Source: Octopus sinensis
Taxonomy: Eukaryota
Assembly: GCF_006345805.1 (NCBI RefSeq)
Contig: NC_043009.1
Span: 11,284,001 to 11,348,000, forward strand
Length of the DNA: 64,000 bases
Direction of reading: 5' to 3'
Position numbers and translations under genes: made by a program. Under the pieces are notes generated by a model. That model was given only the letters and a program-made list of their open reading frames with translations. It did not search any database and had not been told where the DNA came from. Below are positions 5,337 through 51,281 of this stretch, one piece after another. Numbering within the stretch: position 1 is the first letter of the stretch; each line of letters starts with the position of its first letter.

Positions 5337-5394
5337 GTATGTATGTATGTTTGTATGTATGTATTATGTATGCATGCATATATTCCATTACATT

Positions 5395-5461
5395 TTTATT
5401 CTTTTACTCATTTCAGTCACTTGACTGCGGCCATGTTGGAGCACCGCCTTAAGGTATTTAT
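5395..5461 (-). mobile_element. Solo (5'-truncated) SINE family A tail
   Basis: The reverse complement reads aaggcggtgctccaacatggccgcagtcaagtgactgaaatgagtaaaagaata. Confidence 0.8.
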
Positions 5462-7434: not shown

Positions 7435-7620
7435 TTTGGTAGGAGGTCAGGCGATTACATTGAACCCAGTCCTCATCTGCTACTTATTTTATCGACCCCC
7501 GAAACGATAAAAGCAAAGCCAACCTCAGAAGAATTCAAACTCAAAACATAAAGACCGAAGGAAGTGTCGCTATGGATTTTGTCCGGCGTGCTGCCGATTC
7601 TGCCAGCTCGTCGCCTTCGA
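7435..7620 (-). mobile_element. Diverged SINE family B copy; a second diverged copy lies at about 6830-6985
   Basis: ttttatcgacccccgaaacgataaaagcaaagccaacctcagaagaattcaaactca...tgccgattctgccagctcgtcgcc. Confidence 0.65.
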
Positions 7621-9144
7621 TGAAGTAAAGATAACGAAAATAGGCCAAACAAATATAACTAAAACATTACTGTATCTATATGACTCATTGTTTACGGTGT
7701 TATCGACTATTTTACTGCGCAGTTGGTGCGAGAAATACAGTTTTGTTTGCGAAGTACGACAGGGCAGAAAAATAACATACATTATCATTTTAGTGAATGA
7801 TACTTTTTATTCTCCGAGATTCATAATTATAGCTATAGCAATGCGATTATATTGTGACTATAATACGACTGTCACATAAATGAATGACCCAGGAAAATTT
7901 CCCAGAGTTGCCTTCTGCATGAAAACCTTTCAGCTAAGTAGAATTAACATACTTAATGTAGTTAGTAAGCCTTCTAAAAATATTTTTAATTAATTAAAGT
8001 TACACCCGTATTTAAGGATACAAGTATTAACTTTAGAGATAATTGATGTCAAGAAAAGCAAGGGGGTTAACTCTAAAATTCAATTTAATTCAATGTGTGC
8101 ATGGCGTTTGGTGGGAACGAGTCTGATCTTTGGCAAGTAGGATTAATAACTTCGGATAATTAACGTCTTATTAGAATCTTATTATTTTTATGTGAAAGCT
8201 ATTCTAACCTGTACGAAACCATACCTATGAGGAAACGAAAAATCCCAGCTCTTATCCTGAAAAGGAGAAAATCCACACGGATTTCATGCAACTGGGCGAG
8301 AAACAATATTTCCGAGAATTCTAGTCTATTAAATGACACTAATTACTATTTTATCGAGGGATCTAATTTTCTACTCGAATTCCAAAAGTCAAGTTAACTA
8401 TGACAAGATTTTAATTAAAATCAGTAATTTGACAAATTGTATATATAATTAATTTAATTGGATGCTTTATCACTATCGTCATGAATCAAGAACAATAATT
8501 CCGAATAAAATCAAATGAAATATTGAAAGTCTATAATCTCAACGCTTACATATTAAATATTGTTATATTTATGAATATTATTTGAGGACATCATTCCATG
8601 GAAGTTTTTCCAAATCACTACGGTTTAATGCCCCCTCCCACACACACACACGCATACCACTTTACGGATAATATATTCACGTCTTTGTTTACATGTGGGA
8701 TTCGTTAATTCATGAGATAAAGTATTTTGGACCCAACTGATACTTTGAACATACTACACTTGAGACACGAGTAGAACACATAGCTTAATTTAGCAGTCAT
8801 CATCGCACCCATTCTTATCAATACAGCATTGTATCATTATTATTCAGGATGAAAAAAAATAAAAAACATAGGTAGTAATAGTACTTGTAAAACACTCGTA
8901 AAAAAATTCAGAAGCAATTTTCAAACTATGAAATTAGAAGATATTAAATACTGTTAATCACAAACTGACGAAATGTTTCTGTTAATGTTGTTAAAAAGTA
9001 TTTCAAATACACCAATGAAAATCTTTTATCGCTAAATTTAATAACAGCAGGTGTTTACCTCCACTTACATCATTTTTTTCCCATATCTTTTACTTGTTTC
9101 AGTTTTTTAACTACGGCAATGCTGGGGCACCGACTTACTATATG

Positions 9145-10634
9145 TCTTGGTTTATTTGTATCTTAGTTTATATATGAACTAAACCATCATAAATACTTAT
9201 GTTTAGATAAAAAGAAATCTTTATCTTCCTATATTTAGTTATCAAAATGTACTAAATTGAACAATGTATTGCATGCTGTACGGCTCAAGTCTCTTCGAAG
9301 TTACAGGATCGTAAAGCCCCTAACGCTAGTTATCAAGCAGTGGTGGGGGACAAACACAGACACAAAGATACACACGTAGATACACGCACACACACACGCA
9401 CATGTGTATATGTAAACATATATGTGTGTGTGTCTTTGCATATATTCTTTTATTCTTTTACTTGTTTCAGTCATTTGACGGCAGCCATGATGGAGCATCG
9501 CCTTGAAGGGTTTTAGCCGAATAAATAGGCCCCAGGACTTATTTCTTAAGCTTAGAACGTATTCTATCGGTCTCTTTAGCTGAATCGTTGTGTTACGATG
9601 ACGTAAACACACCAACATCGGTTATCAAGTGATGATGGCTTGGTGGTGCAAAAACAGGCACAAAAACAAACACACATAGATATATACATATCCATGTGTT
9701 TGGGAAGCAAGCGTCTTACCACACAGCCACGCACAACGGGCTTTTCCTGTTTCCATCTGCCAAATCCACTCACAAGGCTTTGGCCGGCCCAAGGCTATAG
9801 TAGAAGACACTTGCCCAAGGTGCCATAGAATGGGACTGAACAGGGAAACATATGGTTAGGGAGTAAGCTTTTTACCACACATCCACGCAGATATTATTAA
9901 TATCCATTATCCATTCTCTCTCTCTGATGAACGTCACGTAGTTATAGTTTTGACAAGATATTTCTGTATGGCCATTAAATTCTCAAGAAATAGCATGCCT
10001 TGGTTAATCTTTTCGCAAGACGAAATTAGGTGCCTCAAATCTAATGGTCTAAGAAACCTCATCGTATTTACAACCGAATGGATTTTCAATATCAAACAAT
10101 ATTCATACAACTACATAAGGGAAATCTGGTTGCCAGTTAGAAACTAATGAGGTATAATAACTATATGACAGTCGGATGAATTTCCTTTACATTTATGAGG
10201 ATATAAGTTCAATTCTGCTGCATACAGCTTGATATGTCTTTGAGCGGAAAGTTTAACTACATGTCTTAATTCCCTATAAAGAAGGCAAATACATACTAGA
10301 ATATTCTACCGGTAACTAGTTGATGTTCTACTTTTTGCAGAAAAGGTTTTATCGCTCATCTGCTTAATGCCGTCAAACTTGATGTGCTCACTCCACTCAT
10401 GACTTCCCTGTGGACTATAACATATTTGCCATGCCATCATTTGTTATAGATTGATTCTTCTTATTTATGACTTAAATATAAAATATTATATCTTGGTTTA
10501 TTTGTATCTTAGTTTATATATGAACCAAACCATCGTCAATACTTATTATGATTAGATAAAAAAAAAAATTCCTTAATCTCTGGTCATCAAAACGTACTAA
10601 ACTGATCAATATATTGTATGCTGTACGGCTCAAG
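9145..10634 (+). repeat. ~145-bp dispersed direct repeat (9145-9289 and 10491-10634)
   Basis: Both copies read tcttggtttatttgtatcttagtttatatatgaac.aaaccatc...gctgtacggctcaag; about 80% identical by eye. Confidence 0.85.
9442..9890 (-). mobile_element. SINE family A copy with an internal duplicated head fragment (about 9692-9734)
   Basis: The tail tattcttttacttgtttcagtcatttgacggcagccatgatggagcatcgcc and head region gacacttgcccaaggtgcca...ttaccacaca are both present. Confidence 0.8.
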
Positions 10635-13000: not shown

Positions 13001-13293
13001 TTGTTCCTTCTCGAGCCATGCTTGGCTCATAAGGGCCGGTTTCCCAGTTTCCTTGGCATATAGGTTCCCCACCTGGACGGGACGCCGGTCCGTCGCAGGT
13101 AAGCTGCAAGAGGAAAGAGTGAGAGAAAGTTGTGGCTAAAGAGTCAGCAGAAGTTCGCCATTACCTTCTGCCGGAGCCGCGTGGAGCTTAGGTGTTTTGC
13201 TCATTAACACACACATCACCTGGTCTGAGATTCGAACCCGCGATCCCTCGACCACGAGTCCGCTGCTCGAACCACTAGACCATGTGCCTCCAC
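13001..13293 (-). mobile_element. tRNA-derived SINE family C body, tail type 2
   Basis: Head gtggaggcacatggtctagtggttcgagcagcggactcg...gggttcgaatctc. The tail includes ggaaactgggaaaccggcccttatgagccaagcatggctcgagaagg. Confidence 0.88.
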
Positions 13294-45050: not shown

Positions 45051-45248
45051 GGCGGTGAGCTGGCAGAATCGTTAGCGCGCTGGACGAATTGCTTAGCAGT
45101 ATTTCGCCCGTCGCTACGTTCTGAGTTCAAATTCCGCCGAGGTCGACTTTACCTTTCATCATTTTGGAGATGATAAATTAAGTACCAGTGAAACACTAGT
45201 CCCTTCCCCACAAGTTTGAGGCCTTGTACCTCCAGTAGAAAGGATTAT
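45051..45248 (+). mobile_element. SINE family B monomer with alternative tail
   Basis: ggcggtgagctggcagaatcgttagc...gagttcaaattccgccgaggtcgac...gaggccttgtacctccagtagaaaggattat. Confidence 0.88.
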
Positions 45249-45456
45249 GAGAACGGGATCTCAACGCATATGAAAATTAAACCTCATTCATATGGTTACT
45301 TGCTGTGCACTTTTGCACTACTAAGTACACACACGCACACACACACGCAGACACACACTCGCGTGTACACACACTCGTGCGTGCACATACGCGCGCGTGC
45401 ACACACGCACAACTTCACTCACCACACACACACACACACACAAACACACAAACATA

Positions 45457-45510
45457 TTAGGCTTCCTGGCTTTCAAACAGGCGGCCCGGGTTCGGTTCCC
45501 GGCATGAGGA
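45457..45510 (+). pseudogene. trnE: 5'-truncated tRNA-Glu(TTC) pseudogene fused to a SINE tail (45519-45583)
   Basis: TTAGG CTT CCTGG CT TTC AA ACAGG CGGC CCGGG TTCGGTT CCCGG CATGAGG A matches eukaryotic tRNA-Glu from the D-loop onward. The anticodon TTC is at 45472-45474. The 5' acceptor strand is missing. Confidence 0.8.
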
Positions 45511-45608
45511 CACAACTATTCTAAGGCCGTGCTCAAGTATGGCCGCAGTCATATGACTGGAACAAGTAAAACAATATAAGAATATATATATATATATATA
45601 TATATATA

Positions 45609-46490
45609 CATGGGTTGGACAAAATAATGGAGATACCTTAAAATTTCAAACAAATTTATTTTAATACGGCGTAGGACCGCCTTTGGCAGTAATTACAGCT
45701 TGAATTCCACAAGGTATGAACACGTACAAAGTTTGAATTGTTTCCAACGGAATTTTTGCCCATTCTTCAGCTAAAACAGTTTCCAGTTCTTGTAGTGATG
45801 ATGGTGGGAGATATCGACTCCTCCCTTGTTTTATTAAAATGAACCATCAATTTTCAATAATATTGAGATCTGGGGGACTGTGGTGGCCAGATAAGATGTT
45901 CAACTTCACTAGAATGTTCCTCGTGCCATTTCAGTAACTACTTTAGCTGTGTGATTTGGTGCATTATCATCCTGGAAGATTAAGTTTCTCTCCGGAAACA
46001 GTTTCACAACCATAGAATGAATTGGATCAACTAAAATGCTTAGTCCTGACTATTAATTCTGCCTTGAAGGGAAACCATTGGGCCGGCGGATTTCCAAGAT
46101 ATAGCATCACCAGATCATCTCATATCCATGTTTAACGGATGGAAGAAGGCAGTGTGGGTCAAATGCTTTCGGCTGTCTCCACACATATACTCGGCCAGTG
46201 CTCAGAAATTAGGTAAAGGATGACTCGTTCGAGAAAATAACAATCTTCCACCCCTCCAGGGATCAATTCTGTGAAGTTTTACTCCATTCTAAATGCTTTG
46301 CAACGTTTGTCTTTGAAAGTAGTGGTTGTCTGATTGCAGCCCTCCCGTGAAATCCGGTTTTGTGCAGCTCTCCCGTCGACCATTTTTTGTGGAAACTGGG
46401 TTCTTGAAGTAGTCATTAAGCTCTGCAGTAATTTTGTAAGCTGTACTTTTGTAATCCTTTCTAACAATTTGCGTATGAGTCCAACTGTCC
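45609..46490 (-). mobile_element. Tc1 (DD34E) element, 3' half with TIR
   Basis: TA|CATGGGTTGGACAAAATAATGG TIR at 45609. The minus-strand translation gives TQIVRKDYKSTAYKITAELN, VIFSNESSFTLF, IFQDDNAPNHTAKVV and IWPPQSP-DLNIIEN, with frameshifts. Confidence 0.88.
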
Positions 46491-46494
46491 ATCA

Positions 46495-46985
46495 GACTTG
46501 TTTATTGACATAGCGAAAATGTGTTTCACTGGGAACTGGAACTGTTTAAATGTAAATGGGAGGTCATATGGGATTAACAGGATTCGTGGAATTGAGAAAT
46601 CTTCACCCTTGTAATTCCCAGTCATAACTGTTGTCTCTAGGACATGGGGTCGCATCGCTTTCACCACCAGTCTGGTGCCATTGCACAGACGAGGTGGATC
46701 CAGATTCCTGAGCAGCATAATTGGATCTCCATTTTTAAGTGTTGAGTGGTTAGATATCATCTTAGATGGCTGTAGGGAGTTCAGGGACTCAGTTGCAAAA
46801 ACTACAGCCTGGTCCTGATTACTAGACGTCGAGGGATTTGAAAGTCTGTTCGTGTCCAGGCAACGGCTGCAAGAGACCCCAGTTGATTTTGTTGACAGCA
46901 TCATTACGTGGAGCGAAGATGGCTCGCTCACAGAGCCGTTTACTGTTGCTAAAGTTTCGGGCAATGTTTAGGAGCACATGTATTA
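46495..46985 (-). pseudogene. Helitron PIF1-family helicase C-terminal fragment
   Basis: LCERAIFAPRNDAVNKIN...PGHEQTFKSLD / ESLNSLQP...PIMLLRNLDPPRLCNGTRLVVK...IPRILLIP...FQFPVKHIFAMSINKS: SF1B helicase motifs up to motif VI. Confidence 0.9.
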
Positions 46986-48094: not shown

Positions 48095-49120
48095 AAGGCA
48101 TCTAAATGCTTTCCTAGTTCCTTGATGCTTTTCAACATTGCTTTCTGCAATACGTCACAATAAAGCTTCGAATCCATTGTTTTCTCAATAAATGTAAGTC
48201 CTTCCAAACAAGTCACACTCATGCATCCCCAAAACATAACACGCTGCCGTGTTTCATGGTAGGCCCGGTGTATTTGTCGCTATTATCTTCCCCAAGTCGT
48301 CGCCATACTCGTTTGATACCATCTGACCCAAACAAGTTGATTTTAGTCCTATGAGAAAAAAGAATTTTATTCCAAAATTCCTTTCCCTTACTCACATAGG
48401 TTTCGGGAAAAATAAAAAGATAACTTGATTTTTACCTGGTAGTGAAAAGAGGCTTCCTACGAGGAATGCGTCCATGAAGACTACACTGGTTCAAACTTCG
48501 GCGAACAGTTTGGACGGATACACACTTTCCACTAACAGATGACATTTTTAGGGTCAAAGAAGAAGCGGTACGACACCGCCCAGTAGCTTTGTGCTTCTGA
48601 ATTAATTTGGCAACTGTGTTACGCTAATATGTATTTGTTTGCTAATTAACTTGTATCCTACGCCATTTTTGTGCAAATTAAAAATAATTTTCTTCAAATT
48701 TCTACACAATTCATTTCCTTTTGGAGCCATTTTTATCATAGTGAAGTGGATTTTCACCACGGGCCACAAATCAGAATTCCTGCAGTTGCAATAACAATGA
48801 TCGGTGCAAAGATTCCAGGAGAAATAATTCATTAGAACTGAAATTATCTGAATTTAGTAAAAAAATAAAAATATGCATAAAATATTTAATATAGTAAATT
48901 TCCTATAGGGTGTACGTATCTTTGTAACGTTTGAAAATTAATATTTCGTTTGTATTTTTGAAAATTTTTGTTTTGTGTTCCAAATTTGTATAATGTTTGC
49001 ATGTATAATTGCATAATATATTTTATTTAGTATATATTTCATTTGATTTCCTTCGATATTATAAGGCTAATAGCAATCTTACTGAAATGTTTTAGGGGTG
49101 TACATACTTTAGTGCGATAG
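48095..49120 (-). mobile_element. Second Tc1 element: 5' end and decayed transposase, with IR/DR-type terminus
   Basis: ATG at 48730 (MAPKGNELCRNLKKIIFNLHKNGVGYKLIS), followed by QTVRRSLNQCSLHGRIPRRKPL, KINLFGSDGIKRVWRR and VMFWGCMS. The motif ggg(g)tgtac.ta.cttt occurs at the outer end (49094-49110) and again about 190 bp inside (48907-48923). Confidence 0.85.
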
Positions 49121-50560: not shown

Positions 50561-50610
<50 letters not shown>

Positions 50611-50612
<2 letters not shown>

Positions 50613-50711
50613 TAGAATGGCCGATTGGTCTAAGGCACCAGGTACCTTAACCTGAAGATTGTGTATTCTGACCCACGACTGTGGGCGTAGGTTCGAATCC
50701 CACTTCTGACA
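50611..50711 (+). pseudogene. trnL: tRNA-Leu(CAA-type) pseudogene with an apparently retained 24-nt intron and missing anticodon, fused to a SINE-type tail (50726-50799)
   Basis: Acceptor stem GTTAGAA/TTCTGAC+A, D-arm TGGCCGATTGGTCTAAGGC, variable arm CCCAC-GACT-GTGGG, T-arm GTAGG-TTCGAAT-CCCAC. The segment 50642-50665 occupies the position of the anticodon loop and the canonical 37/38 intron. Confidence 0.85.
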
Positions 50712-50801
50712 GATAACGTATATTTCTAATGGCGGTACCCCAGCATGGCCACACCTCGTGAGCTGAAACTAGATGAAAATGAAAATGAAAAAAAATGAAT
50801 A

Positions 50802-51220
50802 GGCGCAGGAGTGGCTGTGTGGTAAGTAGCTTGCTAAACAACCACATGGCTCTGGGTTCAGTCCCACTGCGTGGCACCTTGGGCAAGTGTCTTCTGCTAT
50901 AGCCCCGGGCCGACCAATGCCTTGTGAGTGGATTTGGTAGACGGAAACTGAAAGAAGCCCGTCGAATATATGTATATATATATATGTGTGCCTGTATGTT
51001 TGTGTGTCTGTGTCTGTCCCCTTAGCATTTTTTGACAACCGATGCTGCTGTGTTTACGTCCCCGTCACTTAGCGGTTCGGCAAAAAGAGACCGATAGAAT
51101 AAGTACTAGGCTTACAAAAGAATAAGTCCCGGGGTCGAGTTGCTCGATTAAAGGTGGTACTCCAGCATGGCCGCAGTCAAATGACCGAAACAAGTAAAAG
51201 AGTAAAAGAGTAAAAGAGTA
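50802..51220 (+). mobile_element. SINE family A, full length, young
   Basis: ggcgcaggagtggctgtgtggtaagtagcttg...gggttcagtcccactgcg...ggtggtactccagcatggccgcagtcaaatgaccgaaacaa(gtaaaaga)x3. Confidence 0.93.
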
Positions 51221-51222
51221 TG

Positions 51223-51281
<59 letters not shown>

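What the first reader, a model, noticed from the sequence alone, without database searches (positions are those of the whole stretch)
50611..50799. Intron-retaining pre-tRNA-Leu captured with its trailer and fused to a SINE-type tail
The cloverleaf is otherwise nearly intact. Between CCAG and TTCTG lie 24 nt (GTACCTTAACCTGAAGATTGTGTA), the size and position of a metazoan tRNA-Leu(CAA) intron, containing TTG and an antepenultimate G as expected for anticodon-intron pairing. The expected ACTCAAG is absent, explicable as a 7-nt deletion between two AG dinucleotides. After the discriminator comes GATAACGTATATTT, a trailer ending in oligo-T with no CCA, then CTAATGGCGGTACCCCAGCATGGCCACACCTCGTGAGCTGAAACTAGAT(GAAAAT)n, a variant of the family A tail. 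An unspliced, untrimmed nuclear pre-tRNA therefore appears to have been the RT template. With the Glu chimera 5 kb away, this points to a route that turns arbitrary pre-tRNAs into proto-SINEs, or to tail elements that target tRNA gene 3' ends. It could also inflate tRNA gene counts in these genomes.
Basis: partly seen in the sequence, partly recalled or inferred. Interest (0 to 1): 0.8.

Follow-up and report, generated by a model that had tools for sequence, protein, structure and literature searches.

The report
Decayed pre-tRNA-Leu fused to SINE tail
In an octopus genome, a broken leucine tRNA copy that still seems to carry its intron and its 3' trailer is joined to the short tail that the local jumping genes use to get copied. 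It is most likely a one-off product of the known process that creates new SINEs, not a working gene.

Summary
Window 50611-50711 is the only Rfam tRNA hit above threshold (38.2 bits). It is closest to tRNA-Leu(CAA). It has 24 nt where the 7-nt anticodon loop remainder should be, so no anticodon. A 14-nt trailer ending in TTT follows, with no CCA. Then comes a 5'-discrete, roughly 50-nt two-hairpin tail with (GAAAAT)n.

This tail is a variant of the tail on the window's abundant octopus SINE. A second copy of the same variant stands alone in an Octopus sinensis locus, so the tail exists independently of the tRNA.

A 5'-truncated tRNA-Glu(TTC) at 45457-45581 has the same layout. Leu and Glu are the only non-SINE tRNA-like sequences in the window, and both are tail-fused.

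Best reading (about 0.5): one retrotransposition event. The reverse transcriptase copied a tail RNA and then jumped onto the U-ended 3' end of a nuclear pre-tRNA. The copy then decayed.

Not excluded: a daughter of a small Leu-headed SINE family, or a decayed tRNA gene in place with a tail inserted beside it.

The intron reading is plausible: the 3' boundary is exact and TTGnG sits where it should pair with CAA and C32. It could not be checked against host Leu-CAA genes, because no octopus genome could be searched by DNA.

Moderate interest. It is a variant of a known kind of event.

The parts
50597..50610 (+). 5' flank: (TA)n microsatellite ending ATATATATATATGT, flush with tRNA position +1. 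Candidate target-site duplication.
   Evidence: The same 14-mer recurs at 51224-51237, just past the neighbouring SINE. It also occurs inside that SINE (50974), so this is weak evidence.
50611..50641 (+). tRNA-Leu(CAA)-like 5' part: acceptor 5' strand, D arm (box A TGGCCGATTGG at 50618-50628, one mismatch) and the 5' strand of the anticodon stem (CCAG).
   Evidence: Rfam tRNA 38.2 bits. Best match is Leu-CAA.
50642..50665 (+). 24-nt segment in place of A31-G37 plus intron. Probable intron remnant. TTG at 50659-50661 and G at 50663 lie at intron positions -7..-5 and -3.
   Evidence: Chance of TTGnG at that exact place is about 0.0036. Alternative parsings: CTTAAC at 50646-50651, or CCTGAAG at 50651-50657.
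50666..50711 (+). tRNA-Leu 3' part: T38, anticodon stem 3' strand (TCTGA), long variable arm (CCCAC/GTGGG), T arm with a perfect box B (GGTTCGAATCC, 50690-50700), acceptor 3' strand and discriminator A.
50712..50725 (+). 3' trailer GATAACGTATATTT. No CCA. Ends in three T, fewer than the four or more usually expected of a Pol III terminator.
50726..50774 (+). Tail module, variant type. Hairpin 1 is GGCGGTACCCCAGCATGGCC (50731-50750). Hairpin 2 is CACCTCGTGAGCTG (50752-50765). Then AAACTAGAT.
   Evidence: It is 86.5% identical to the stand-alone tail at L004 5191-5243 in O. sinensis.
50775..50801 (+). Tail repeats (GAAAAT)2 followed by GAAAAAAAATGAATA. This is the 3' end of the element.
50802..51219 (+). 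Full-length canonical octopus SINE: tRNA-like head, internal microsatellite, canonical tail with (GTAAAAGA)3. Inserted later, directly after the Leu element. Not part of the chimera.
   Evidence: Probable TSD is ATGAATA/ATGTATA.
45457..45510 (+). Companion case: tRNA-Glu(TTC)-like, positions about 18-73, 5'-truncated against a (CA)n microsatellite.
   Evidence: Rfam tRNA partial match, 14 bits.
45511..45581 (+). Glu trailer CACAACTATT (45511-45520), then a canonical-type tail module (45521-45581), followed by (TA)n.

Best explanation
The element 50611-50801 is a dead chimeric retrocopy made in one retrotransposition event.

Proposed steps:
1. An octopus LINE reverse transcriptase started target-primed reverse transcription on a short tail RNA. 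This RNA has two hairpins plus short tandem repeats, and it is what the enzyme recognises.
2. The enzyme reached the discrete 5' end of that module.
3. It jumped onto the 3' end of a nascent nuclear pre-tRNA-Leu(CAA). That transcript still ended in the U-run left by Pol III termination and still carried its intron.
4. It copied that transcript to, or near, position +1.
5. The product, tRNA-intron-trailer-tail, was integrated into a (TA)n microsatellite.
6. It then decayed: about 9% substitutions and loss of the 5' side of the anticodon loop.
7. Later a SINE inserted directly behind it.

Shown: the parts, their order and orientation, the relation of the tail to the SINE tails and its conserved hairpins, the parallel Glu case, and the independent existence of the variant tail.

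Inferred: the RNA nature of the junction, the template jump, the identity of the 24 nt as an intron, and the timing of the deletion.
For: 1. Association. A box-B scan finds only two tRNA-like sequences that are not SINE heads, Leu and Glu. Each is followed in the same orientation by a tail module, after 14 and 10 nt. Of four tail-only modules in the window, two are tRNA-fused. By my own arithmetic, random placement gives roughly 6e-7.

2. Both trailers end in only TTT or TT directly at the tail's first base. That fits an RNA 3' end inside a terminator U-run. There is no CCA.

3. The Glu copy lacks tRNA positions 1-17 and abuts a microsatellite. This is the 5' truncation typical of retrocopies.

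4. The Leu 5' boundary is flush with (TA)n, and (TA)n resumes beyond the tail. A 14-nt ATATATATATATGT flanks the unit.

5. The tail is a real recognition-type module. It folds into two hairpins, z=-3.5 for the canonical form. Across 16 copies, 88.5% of cells are paired, against 18-45% when partners are slid. Three of the five hairpin-2 pairs change on both sides. The covariation score is 0.247 against 0.182 for shuffles, reached by 0 of 500.

6. The Leu tail variant also occurs alone in O. sinensis at 86.5% identity. Together the two copies imply the stem CAGCU/AGCUG, against CAGUC/GACUG in the canonical tail.

7. Homology of all five tail-only modules begins at the same point. This is also the point where different SINE subfamilies join their bodies to the tail. 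That fits a preferred switching point or a discrete donor RNA.

8. Intron reading. The extra sequence ends exactly before T38. TTG and G lie at -7..-5 and -3, where they would pair with CAA and C32 (p about 0.004). Leu-CAA is one of three tRNAs whose introns are widely conserved in Metazoa (10.1101/2025.06.17.660180). Eukaryotic tRNA introns lie between positions 37 and 38 and pair with the anticodon loop (PMC10485636).

9. Precedent. tRNA/CR1-tail chimeras formed by template switching gave rise to PittSINE (PMC5729268). U6/L1 and tRNA/L1 chimeras are also described (PMC4476161; 10.1101/2025.02.02.635956).
Against: - Intron, trailer and absence of CCA are also exactly what a tRNA gene looks like at the DNA level.
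- No second copy of the Leu-tail junction was found, and no parent gene or empty orthologous site could be examined.
- The flanks are low-complexity, so the candidate TSD is weak. A TA-type TSD can also be drawn for a tail-only insertion.
- The anticodon is missing, so the intron assignment needs an extra event. Two other parsings of the 24 nt exist.
- A real U6 gene in O. sinensis has a SINE about 30 nt from its terminator. So insertions beside Pol III genes do happen.
- The partner LINE was not identified.
Confidence: 0.5

Rival explanations
1. This locus is a daughter copy of a small Leu-headed simple SINE (tRNA head plus tail, no body). The master arose once, either by template switching or by a tail inserting behind a tRNA-Leu gene with a weak terminator. 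Pol III then read through TTT into the tail, and the LINE machinery copied the transcript.
For: - Box B is perfect and box A has one mismatch.
- TTT is shorter than the usual terminator of four or more T, so read-through into the tail is conceivable.
- Octopus genomes are reported to hold many unclassified SINE families: 893 among the recently active insertions in O. vulgaris (PMC13282606).
- The head-plus-tail layout is that of a simple SINE.
Against: - There is no second Leu-tail copy in the window or in 82 kb of other octopus DNA.
- Protein-proxy searches across the junction found none.
- The variant tail's only other copy is not attached to a tRNA.
- A head without an anticodon loop could still be transcribed, so this point is neutral.
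Confidence: 0.2
2. A tRNA-Leu(CAA) gene or DNA-level pseudogene decayed at its original locus. A 5'-truncated tail copy then inserted independently beside its terminator. This could be chance, or the element's endonuclease may prefer T/A-rich sites such as Pol III terminators.
For: - Intron, trailer and lack of CCA are gene features.
- Tail-bearing elements here usually sit in TA-rich sites.
- In O. sinensis a SINE lies about 30 nt from the terminator of a full-length U6 gene (116.7 bits).
Against: - It needs two events at each of two loci, with the tail in the same orientation and starting right after a 2-3 T run both times.
- No full terminator of four or more T remains.
- The Glu partner is 5'-truncated.
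- Microsatellite reaches tRNA-Leu position +1, so no normal 5' flank is left.
- Three tail-only copies have no tRNA or other Rfam RNA upstream.
- The tRNA part has diverged about 9% from positions conserved between human and fly. The tail has diverged about 7% from the two-copy variant consensus. The similar values fit a common age.
Confidence: 0.15
3. The 24 nt is not an intron. It is a later insertion or rearrangement inside the anticodon loop of a copy made from an end-unprocessed but already spliced tRNA.
For: - The anticodon is absent.
- 5-of-7 matches to ACTCAAG somewhere within the 24 nt are expected by chance about 23% of the time (my calculation), so internal 'loop remnants' prove nothing.
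- CAGGU/ACCUG can form a local 5-bp hairpin.
Against: - The extra sequence ends exactly at the canonical 37/38 boundary.
- Its last 8 nt carry TTGnG in register with CAA and C32.
- Its length is in the range I recall for vertebrate Leu-CAA introns (from memory).
- Leu-CAA is one of the isoacceptors expected to have an intron in animals (10.1101/2025.06.17.660180).
Confidence: 0.12

Closest known systems
tRNA/CR1-tail chimeras that found new SINEs (PittSINE from TguSINE1 in passerine birds; PMC5729268)
   Same: A tRNA joined, in the same orientation, to a LINE-derived SINE tail. The proposed origin is RT template switching from a SINE or LINE tail RNA to a tRNA.
   Different: - PittSINE is an amplified family with presence/absence data; here there is one decayed copy.
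- Nothing in that paper mentions an intron or a trailer.
- Here the tRNA part looks like an unspliced precursor with an untrimmed 3' end.
U6/L1 and other small-RNA/LINE-1 chimeric retrocopies (PMC4476161; 10.1101/2025.02.02.635956)
   Same: A Pol III transcript fused 5' of a LINE 3' part. It is explained by a template jump during target-primed reverse transcription. From my own recollection, the U-ended 3' terminus of U6 lies at the junction in those chimeras.
   Different: - L1 is a relaxed, poly(A)-dependent element, and its tRNA chimeras are mostly antisense half-tRNAs.
- Here the partner is a structured tail with short repeats, the tRNA is in sense orientation, and the Leu copy is full-length.
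Stringent-type LINE/SINE 3' tails, for example eel UnaL2/UnaSINE1 with a stem-loop and (TGTAA)n (reviewed in PMC3747384)
   Same: A hairpin kept by compensatory changes, followed by short tandem repeats at the very 3' end and shared by different non-autonomous elements.
   Different: The partner LINE was not found in the window or loci. The clade (CR1/L2-like, RTE or other) is unknown. Function was not tested.
Octopus tRNA-derived SINEs (OK, OR1, OR2; Ohshima and Okada 1994, cited in PMC4758252)
   Same: Same host group. Pol III tRNA-type heads mobilised by LINE machinery.
   Different: - Those are high-copy families with bodies.
- The Leu element has no body.
- Its head is much closer to a real tRNA than the SINE heads in this window: 38 bits, while no SINE head reaches the tRNA gathering score.
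Tailless tRNA retropseudogenes (PMC5322556)
   Same: Retrocopies of tRNAs or tRNA fragments, often truncated.
   Different: By definition those lack a LINE-type or A-rich tail. This element has one.

Membership tests
Functional eukaryotic tRNA-Leu(CAA) gene | Cloverleaf scoring above the Rfam tRNA gathering score, with a long variable arm | tested here: met
   38.2 bits against 29. Variable-arm stem is CCCAC/GTGGG.
Functional eukaryotic tRNA-Leu(CAA) gene | 7-nt anticodon loop carrying CAA | tested here: not met
   CCAG is followed directly by the 24-nt segment, and ACTCAAG is absent. ARAGORN makes no Leu call.
Functional eukaryotic tRNA-Leu(CAA) gene | Intact stems and a terminator of four or more T | tested here: not met
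   A.C mismatch in the T stem, C.A at pair 27:43, and only TTT before the tail.
Intron-containing pre-tRNA (canonical eukaryotic tRNA intron) | Intron between positions 37 and 38, with a proximal anticodon-intron pair (position 32 with intron -3) and pairing to the anticodon | tested here: inconclusive
   The 3' boundary is exact and TTGnG is in register. The 5' exon end (31-37) is missing, so the pairing partner is absent. Host introns were not available.
SINE (Pol III head, LINE-derived tail, repeated family) | Internal Pol III promoter, boxes A and B | tested here: met
   Box B is perfect at 50690-50700. Box A has one mismatch at 50618-50628.
SINE (Pol III head, LINE-derived tail, repeated family) | 3' tail shared with other LINE-dependent elements | tested here: met
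SINE (Pol III head, LINE-derived tail, repeated family) | Many dispersed copies of the same head-tail combination | not testable with these tools
   No DNA search of an octopus genome was available. There is no second copy in the 64-kb window or in 82 kb of octopus loci. Proxy searches were empty.
Template-switch chimeric retrocopy | Two RNA-derived parts in the same orientation, joined at the 3' end of the upstream RNA | tested here: met
   The tRNA plus a trailer ending in T-run abuts the first base of the tail module. The Glu case has the same layout.
Template-switch chimeric retrocopy | One target-site duplication flanking the whole chimera | tested here: inconclusive
   The 14-nt ATATATATATATGT lies on both sides, but it is microsatellite sequence and also occurs elsewhere.
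Template-switch chimeric retrocopy | Absence of the whole unit at the orthologous site of a relative | not testable with these tools
   No ORF of the window is on record in the gene-position index. No orthologous locus could be fetched.
Stringent-type LINE 3' tail | Conserved stem-loop with compensatory changes, followed by short tandem repeats | tested here: met
   hairpin 2 is 93.8% paired and 3 of 5 pairs change on both sides. Repeats are (GTAAAAGA)n or (GAAAAT)n.
Stringent-type LINE 3' tail | An autonomous LINE ending in the same tail | not tested
   No reverse-transcriptase ORF ending in this tail was seen in the window or loci. A systematic search needs the genome.

The most novel reading that the evidence does not exclude
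Octopus LINE reverse transcriptases may habitually finish a discrete tail RNA of about 60 nt and then jump onto the oligo-U 3' ends of nascent Pol III transcripts in the nucleus. This would yield tRNA-trailer-tail chimeras from many isotypes genome-wide, intron-bearing ones included. It would act as a standing 'SINE factory' that could explain the very large number of unclassified SINE families in octopus genomes and inflate tRNA gene counts.
Probability: 0.2. Interest if true: 0.7.

Novelty: new variant of a known kind. Interest (0 to 1): 0.4.

Why it matters
SINE birth is usually reconstructed long after the event, from amplified families. A copy that keeps the trailer and probably the intron of its tRNA donor would show which RNA species is captured: a nuclear, end-unprocessed precursor. 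It would also show where the switch happens, at the 5' edge of the tail module.

If such chimeras are common in octopus genomes, they would help explain the many SINE families there. They would also be a practical warning for tRNA gene counts. Here the Rfam tRNA model scores a dead copy above its threshold.

As a single locus it has no evident function.

Tried and rejected
1. Protein-proxy search for other copies. The 42-aa antisense ORF segment spanning tail, trailer and tRNA 3' half found nothing in the word-indexed database. In the exhaustive HMMER search it found only generic antisense tRNA-Leu ORFs from other organisms.

2. The 79-aa ORF and the Helitron ORF of the window are not on record in the gene-position index.

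3. DNA pattern scans found no octopus DNA. Collections tried: metagenome contigs (the one hit is a GC-rich bacterial chance match), viral contigs and prokaryotic genomes.

4. The Penelope-like GIY-YIG ORF 1.1 kb downstream was used to fish for an orthologous locus. It gave only distant, non-octopus hits.

5. Locus L006, fetched through a 68%-identical helicase hit, has no octopus SINE and was dropped.

6. I looked for small-RNA remnants upstream of the tail-only copy at 5453 and found none. Upstream regions of the two tail-only copies in the window are unrelated, so they are not a shared LINE 3' UTR.

7. Similarity between the Leu and Glu trailers (8 of 10) is not significant, p about 0.05-0.09.

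8. A functional tRNA with another anticodon is rejected. The only relaxed ARAGORN call ('His' with a 15-nt intron) appears only at the lowered threshold, and the stems carry mismatches.

9. More than 200 sub-threshold miRNA-family hits are microsatellite artefacts.

Full report
**What is there**

The window is octopus DNA. Its commonest repeat is a SINE with the head GGCGCAGGAGTGGCTGTGTGG... and a 3' tail, CTAAAGGCGGTGCTCCAGCATGGCCGCAGTCAAATGACTGAAACAAGTAAAAGA(GTAAAAGA)n. The same repeat occurs in loci I fetched from Octopus bimaculoides (L002, L003, L005) and O. sinensis (L004).

At 50611-50711 lies the only Rfam match above a gathering score in the whole window: tRNA, 38.2 bits against 29. 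Exact parts:
- 50611-50641: tRNA 5' part ending in CCAG.
- 50642-50665: the 24-nt segment.
- 50666-50711: tRNA 3' part, starting TTCTG and ending in discriminator A.
- 50712-50725: trailer GATAACGTATATTT, no CCA.
- 50726-50774: tail core.
- 50775-50801: (GAAAAT)2GAAAAAAAATGAATA.
- From 50802: a full-length canonical SINE.

**Which tRNA, and in what state**

Leu-CAA fits best, 69-70 of 83 positions, against 60-65 for other Leu isoacceptors and 55 for Ser.

The copy is not functional.
- The anticodon loop is missing.
- The pair closing the anticodon stem is C.A.
- The T stem has an A.C mismatch.
- Box A has a G-to-T change.
- Two acceptor-stem transitions keep pairing.

That is about six substitutions at roughly 64 positions where human and fly agree, or about 9%. 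ARAGORN finds nothing except at relaxed settings.

**The 24 nt**

A spliced Leu-CAA would have 7 nt (ACTCAAG) between CCAG and TTCTG. Here there are 24, so at least 17 are extra, and they end exactly before T38.

Eukaryotic tRNA introns lie between positions 37 and 38 and pair with the anticodon loop. Only the proximal anticodon-intron pair seems conserved (PMC10485636). Leu-CAA is one of three tRNAs whose introns are widely conserved across Metazoa (10.1101/2025.06.17.660180).

The last eight bases, ATTGTGTA, put TTG at -7..-5, complementary to CAA. They put G at -3, the partner of C32. The chance of TTGnG at that place is about 0.0036 with the window's base composition.

This supports an intron remnant. 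The 7-nt loss between two AG dinucleotides is only one possible parsing. CTTAAC (50646-50651) or CCTGAAG (50651-50657) could be mutated loop remnants with shorter introns. By my calculation, a 5-of-7 match somewhere in 24 nt is expected about 23% of the time. Without host Leu-CAA genes this cannot be settled.

**The tail**

The canonical tail folds into two hairpins (-17.8 kcal/mol, z=-3.5). I aligned 16 tails from the window and from two other octopus species.
- 88.5% of cells are paired, against 18-45% when partners are slid by 1-3 columns.
- Hairpin 2 is 93.8% paired, and three of its five pairs change on both sides.
- The covariation score is 0.247 against 0.182 for shuffles, reached by 0 of 500.

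The Leu tail matches the first hairpin region well. A leave-out HMM gives E=3.4e-5. Hairpin 2 and the repeat unit, however, are replaced.

The same replacement occurs in a stand-alone tail in O. sinensis (L004 5191-5243), which is 86.5% identical. Each copy has one mismatch at a different stem position. Together they imply the stem CAGCU/AGCUG with loop YGUG, against CAGUC/GACUG with loop AAAU in the canonical tail. That is two compensatory pair changes.

So the Leu tail belongs to a distinct tail lineage that exists without the tRNA. Hairpins followed by short tandem repeats at the 3' end are the signature of 'stringent-type' LINE/SINE tails such as UnaL2 (PMC3747384). I did not find the partner LINE.

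**The pattern around it**

A box-B scan finds only two tRNA-like sequences that are not SINE heads: Leu, and a tRNA-Glu(TTC)-like fragment at 45457-45510. The Glu fragment covers positions about 18-73, is preceded by (CA)n, and is followed by the trailer CACAACTATT and a canonical-type tail.

So both tRNA-like sequences are followed, in the same orientation, by a tail after 10-14 nt. Both trailers end in 2-3 T directly at the first base of the tail module. By my arithmetic, random placement of four tail-only modules would give this about 6e-7 of the time.

The window has two more tail-only modules (5394-5453 and 9086-9137, minus strand), and O. sinensis has one. None has a tRNA or any other Rfam RNA upstream.

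In all five, homology begins at the same point, (CT)AA(A/T)GGCGG. Different SINE subfamilies join different bodies to the tail at this same point. That argues for a discrete donor RNA or a preferred switching point.

**Flanks**

(TA)n reaches tRNA-Leu position +1. Once the later SINE and its probable TSD (ATGAATA/ATGTATA) are removed, (TA)n also follows the tail. The 14-mer ATATATATATATGT then flanks the unit on both sides. The motif is common here, so it is only compatible evidence. A TA-type duplication can also be drawn for a tail-only insertion.

**Most likely mechanism (confidence about 0.5)**

I propose one target-primed reverse transcription event in the nucleus.
1. The RT copies the tail RNA to its 5' end.
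2. It jumps to the 3' end of a primary Pol III transcript that still ends in U's.
3. It copies that transcript, fully for Leu and only to the D loop for Glu.

Non-templated A addition pairing with the U-run would favour such jumps. That step is my inference.

An intron-bearing precursor with an unprocessed 3' end and little or no 5' leader is a normal nuclear intermediate (established tRNA-processing knowledge).

The tRNA part has diverged about 9%. The tail has diverged about 7% from the two-copy variant consensus. The similar values fit a common age.

The mechanism has precedent: PittSINE (PMC5729268), U6/L1 and tRNA/L1 chimeras (PMC4476161), and module exchange in mollusc SINEs (PMC4758252).

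**Rivals**

- *Daughter of a small Leu-headed simple SINE (about 0.2).* Box B is intact and TTT is a weak terminator. No second copy was seen, but I could search only 146 kb of octopus DNA.
- *Decayed gene in place plus a separate tail insertion (about 0.15).* Intron, trailer and lack of CCA are gene features. In O. sinensis a SINE ends about 30 nt from the terminator of a full-length U6 gene. Against it: two events are needed at each of two loci with the same geometry, the Glu copy is truncated, there is no full terminator, and no 5' flank remains.
- *The 24 nt is not an intron (about 0.12).* This is a sub-question and is not exclusive of the readings above.

**Limits**

No tool here searches an octopus genome by DNA. 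Protein-proxy searches, exact-ORF look-ups and pattern scans of the metagenome, viral and prokaryote collections gave nothing useful. Three things remain untested: copy number, the parent gene, and the orthologous empty site.

**Verdict**

This is a decayed tRNA-Leu(CAA)-derived sequence, with probable intron and trailer, fused to a LINE/SINE recognition tail. It is best explained as a template-switch chimera, which is a known kind of event. The unusual feature is that the captured RNA appears to be an unspliced, untrimmed precursor.

Interest is moderate. It would rise if a genome-wide scan shows that such chimeras are common.

Noticed in passing
L004 7441-7640 (O. sinensis CM016877.1): A full-length U6 snRNA gene (7535-7640, minus strand, 116.7 bits, TATA-like box upstream) lies tail-to-tail with a SINE copy. 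The SINE's 3' repeats end about 30 nt from the U6 terminator.
   Followed up: partly
window 5394-5453(-), 9086-9137(-), 45521-45581(+), 50726-50801(+); L004 5191-5243(+): Tail-only modules of about 50-80 nt with no SINE body. Their homology always starts at the same (CT)AA(A/T)GGCGG. Different SINE subfamilies attach their bodies at this same point, which suggests a discrete tail RNA or a switching hot spot.
   Followed up: partly
window 9137-9290 and 10487-10634: Two 83%-identical paralogous stretches. Only the first is followed by a tail module, so this pair could serve as a natural filled-versus-empty comparison.
   Followed up: partly
window 46464-46967(-), 48605-48853(-), 51910-52290(-): Remnants of transposon proteins: Pif1 2B-domain helicase (Helitron-type; closest named hits are Octopus proteins), a Sleeping-Beauty-type HTH below Pfam's cut-off, and a GIY-YIG nuclease domain (Penelope-like).
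   Followed up: partly
window 13139-13405(-), 45100-45250(+), 57250-57540(+): At least three other tRNA-headed SINE families, with heads and bodies different from the main SINE.
   Followed up: no
window 18450-21420 and many other sites: Very long (CATA)n, (TA)n and (CA)n arrays. Nearly every SINE tail is followed by (TA)n-type microsatellite. These arrays produce more than 200 sub-threshold Rfam miRNA hits (mir-297, mir-3149 and others) that are artefacts.
   Followed up: partly
window 25400-30300: Long low-complexity arrays that read as poly-Ser, poly-His or poly-Leu ORFs of up to 368 aa in several frames. These are simple tri- or hexanucleotide repeats, not genes.
   Followed up: no
window 50802-51219 and other full SINE copies: The main SINE has an internal (TA/TG)n microsatellite between its head half and its tail half. 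It looks like a composite of two older units.
   Followed up: no
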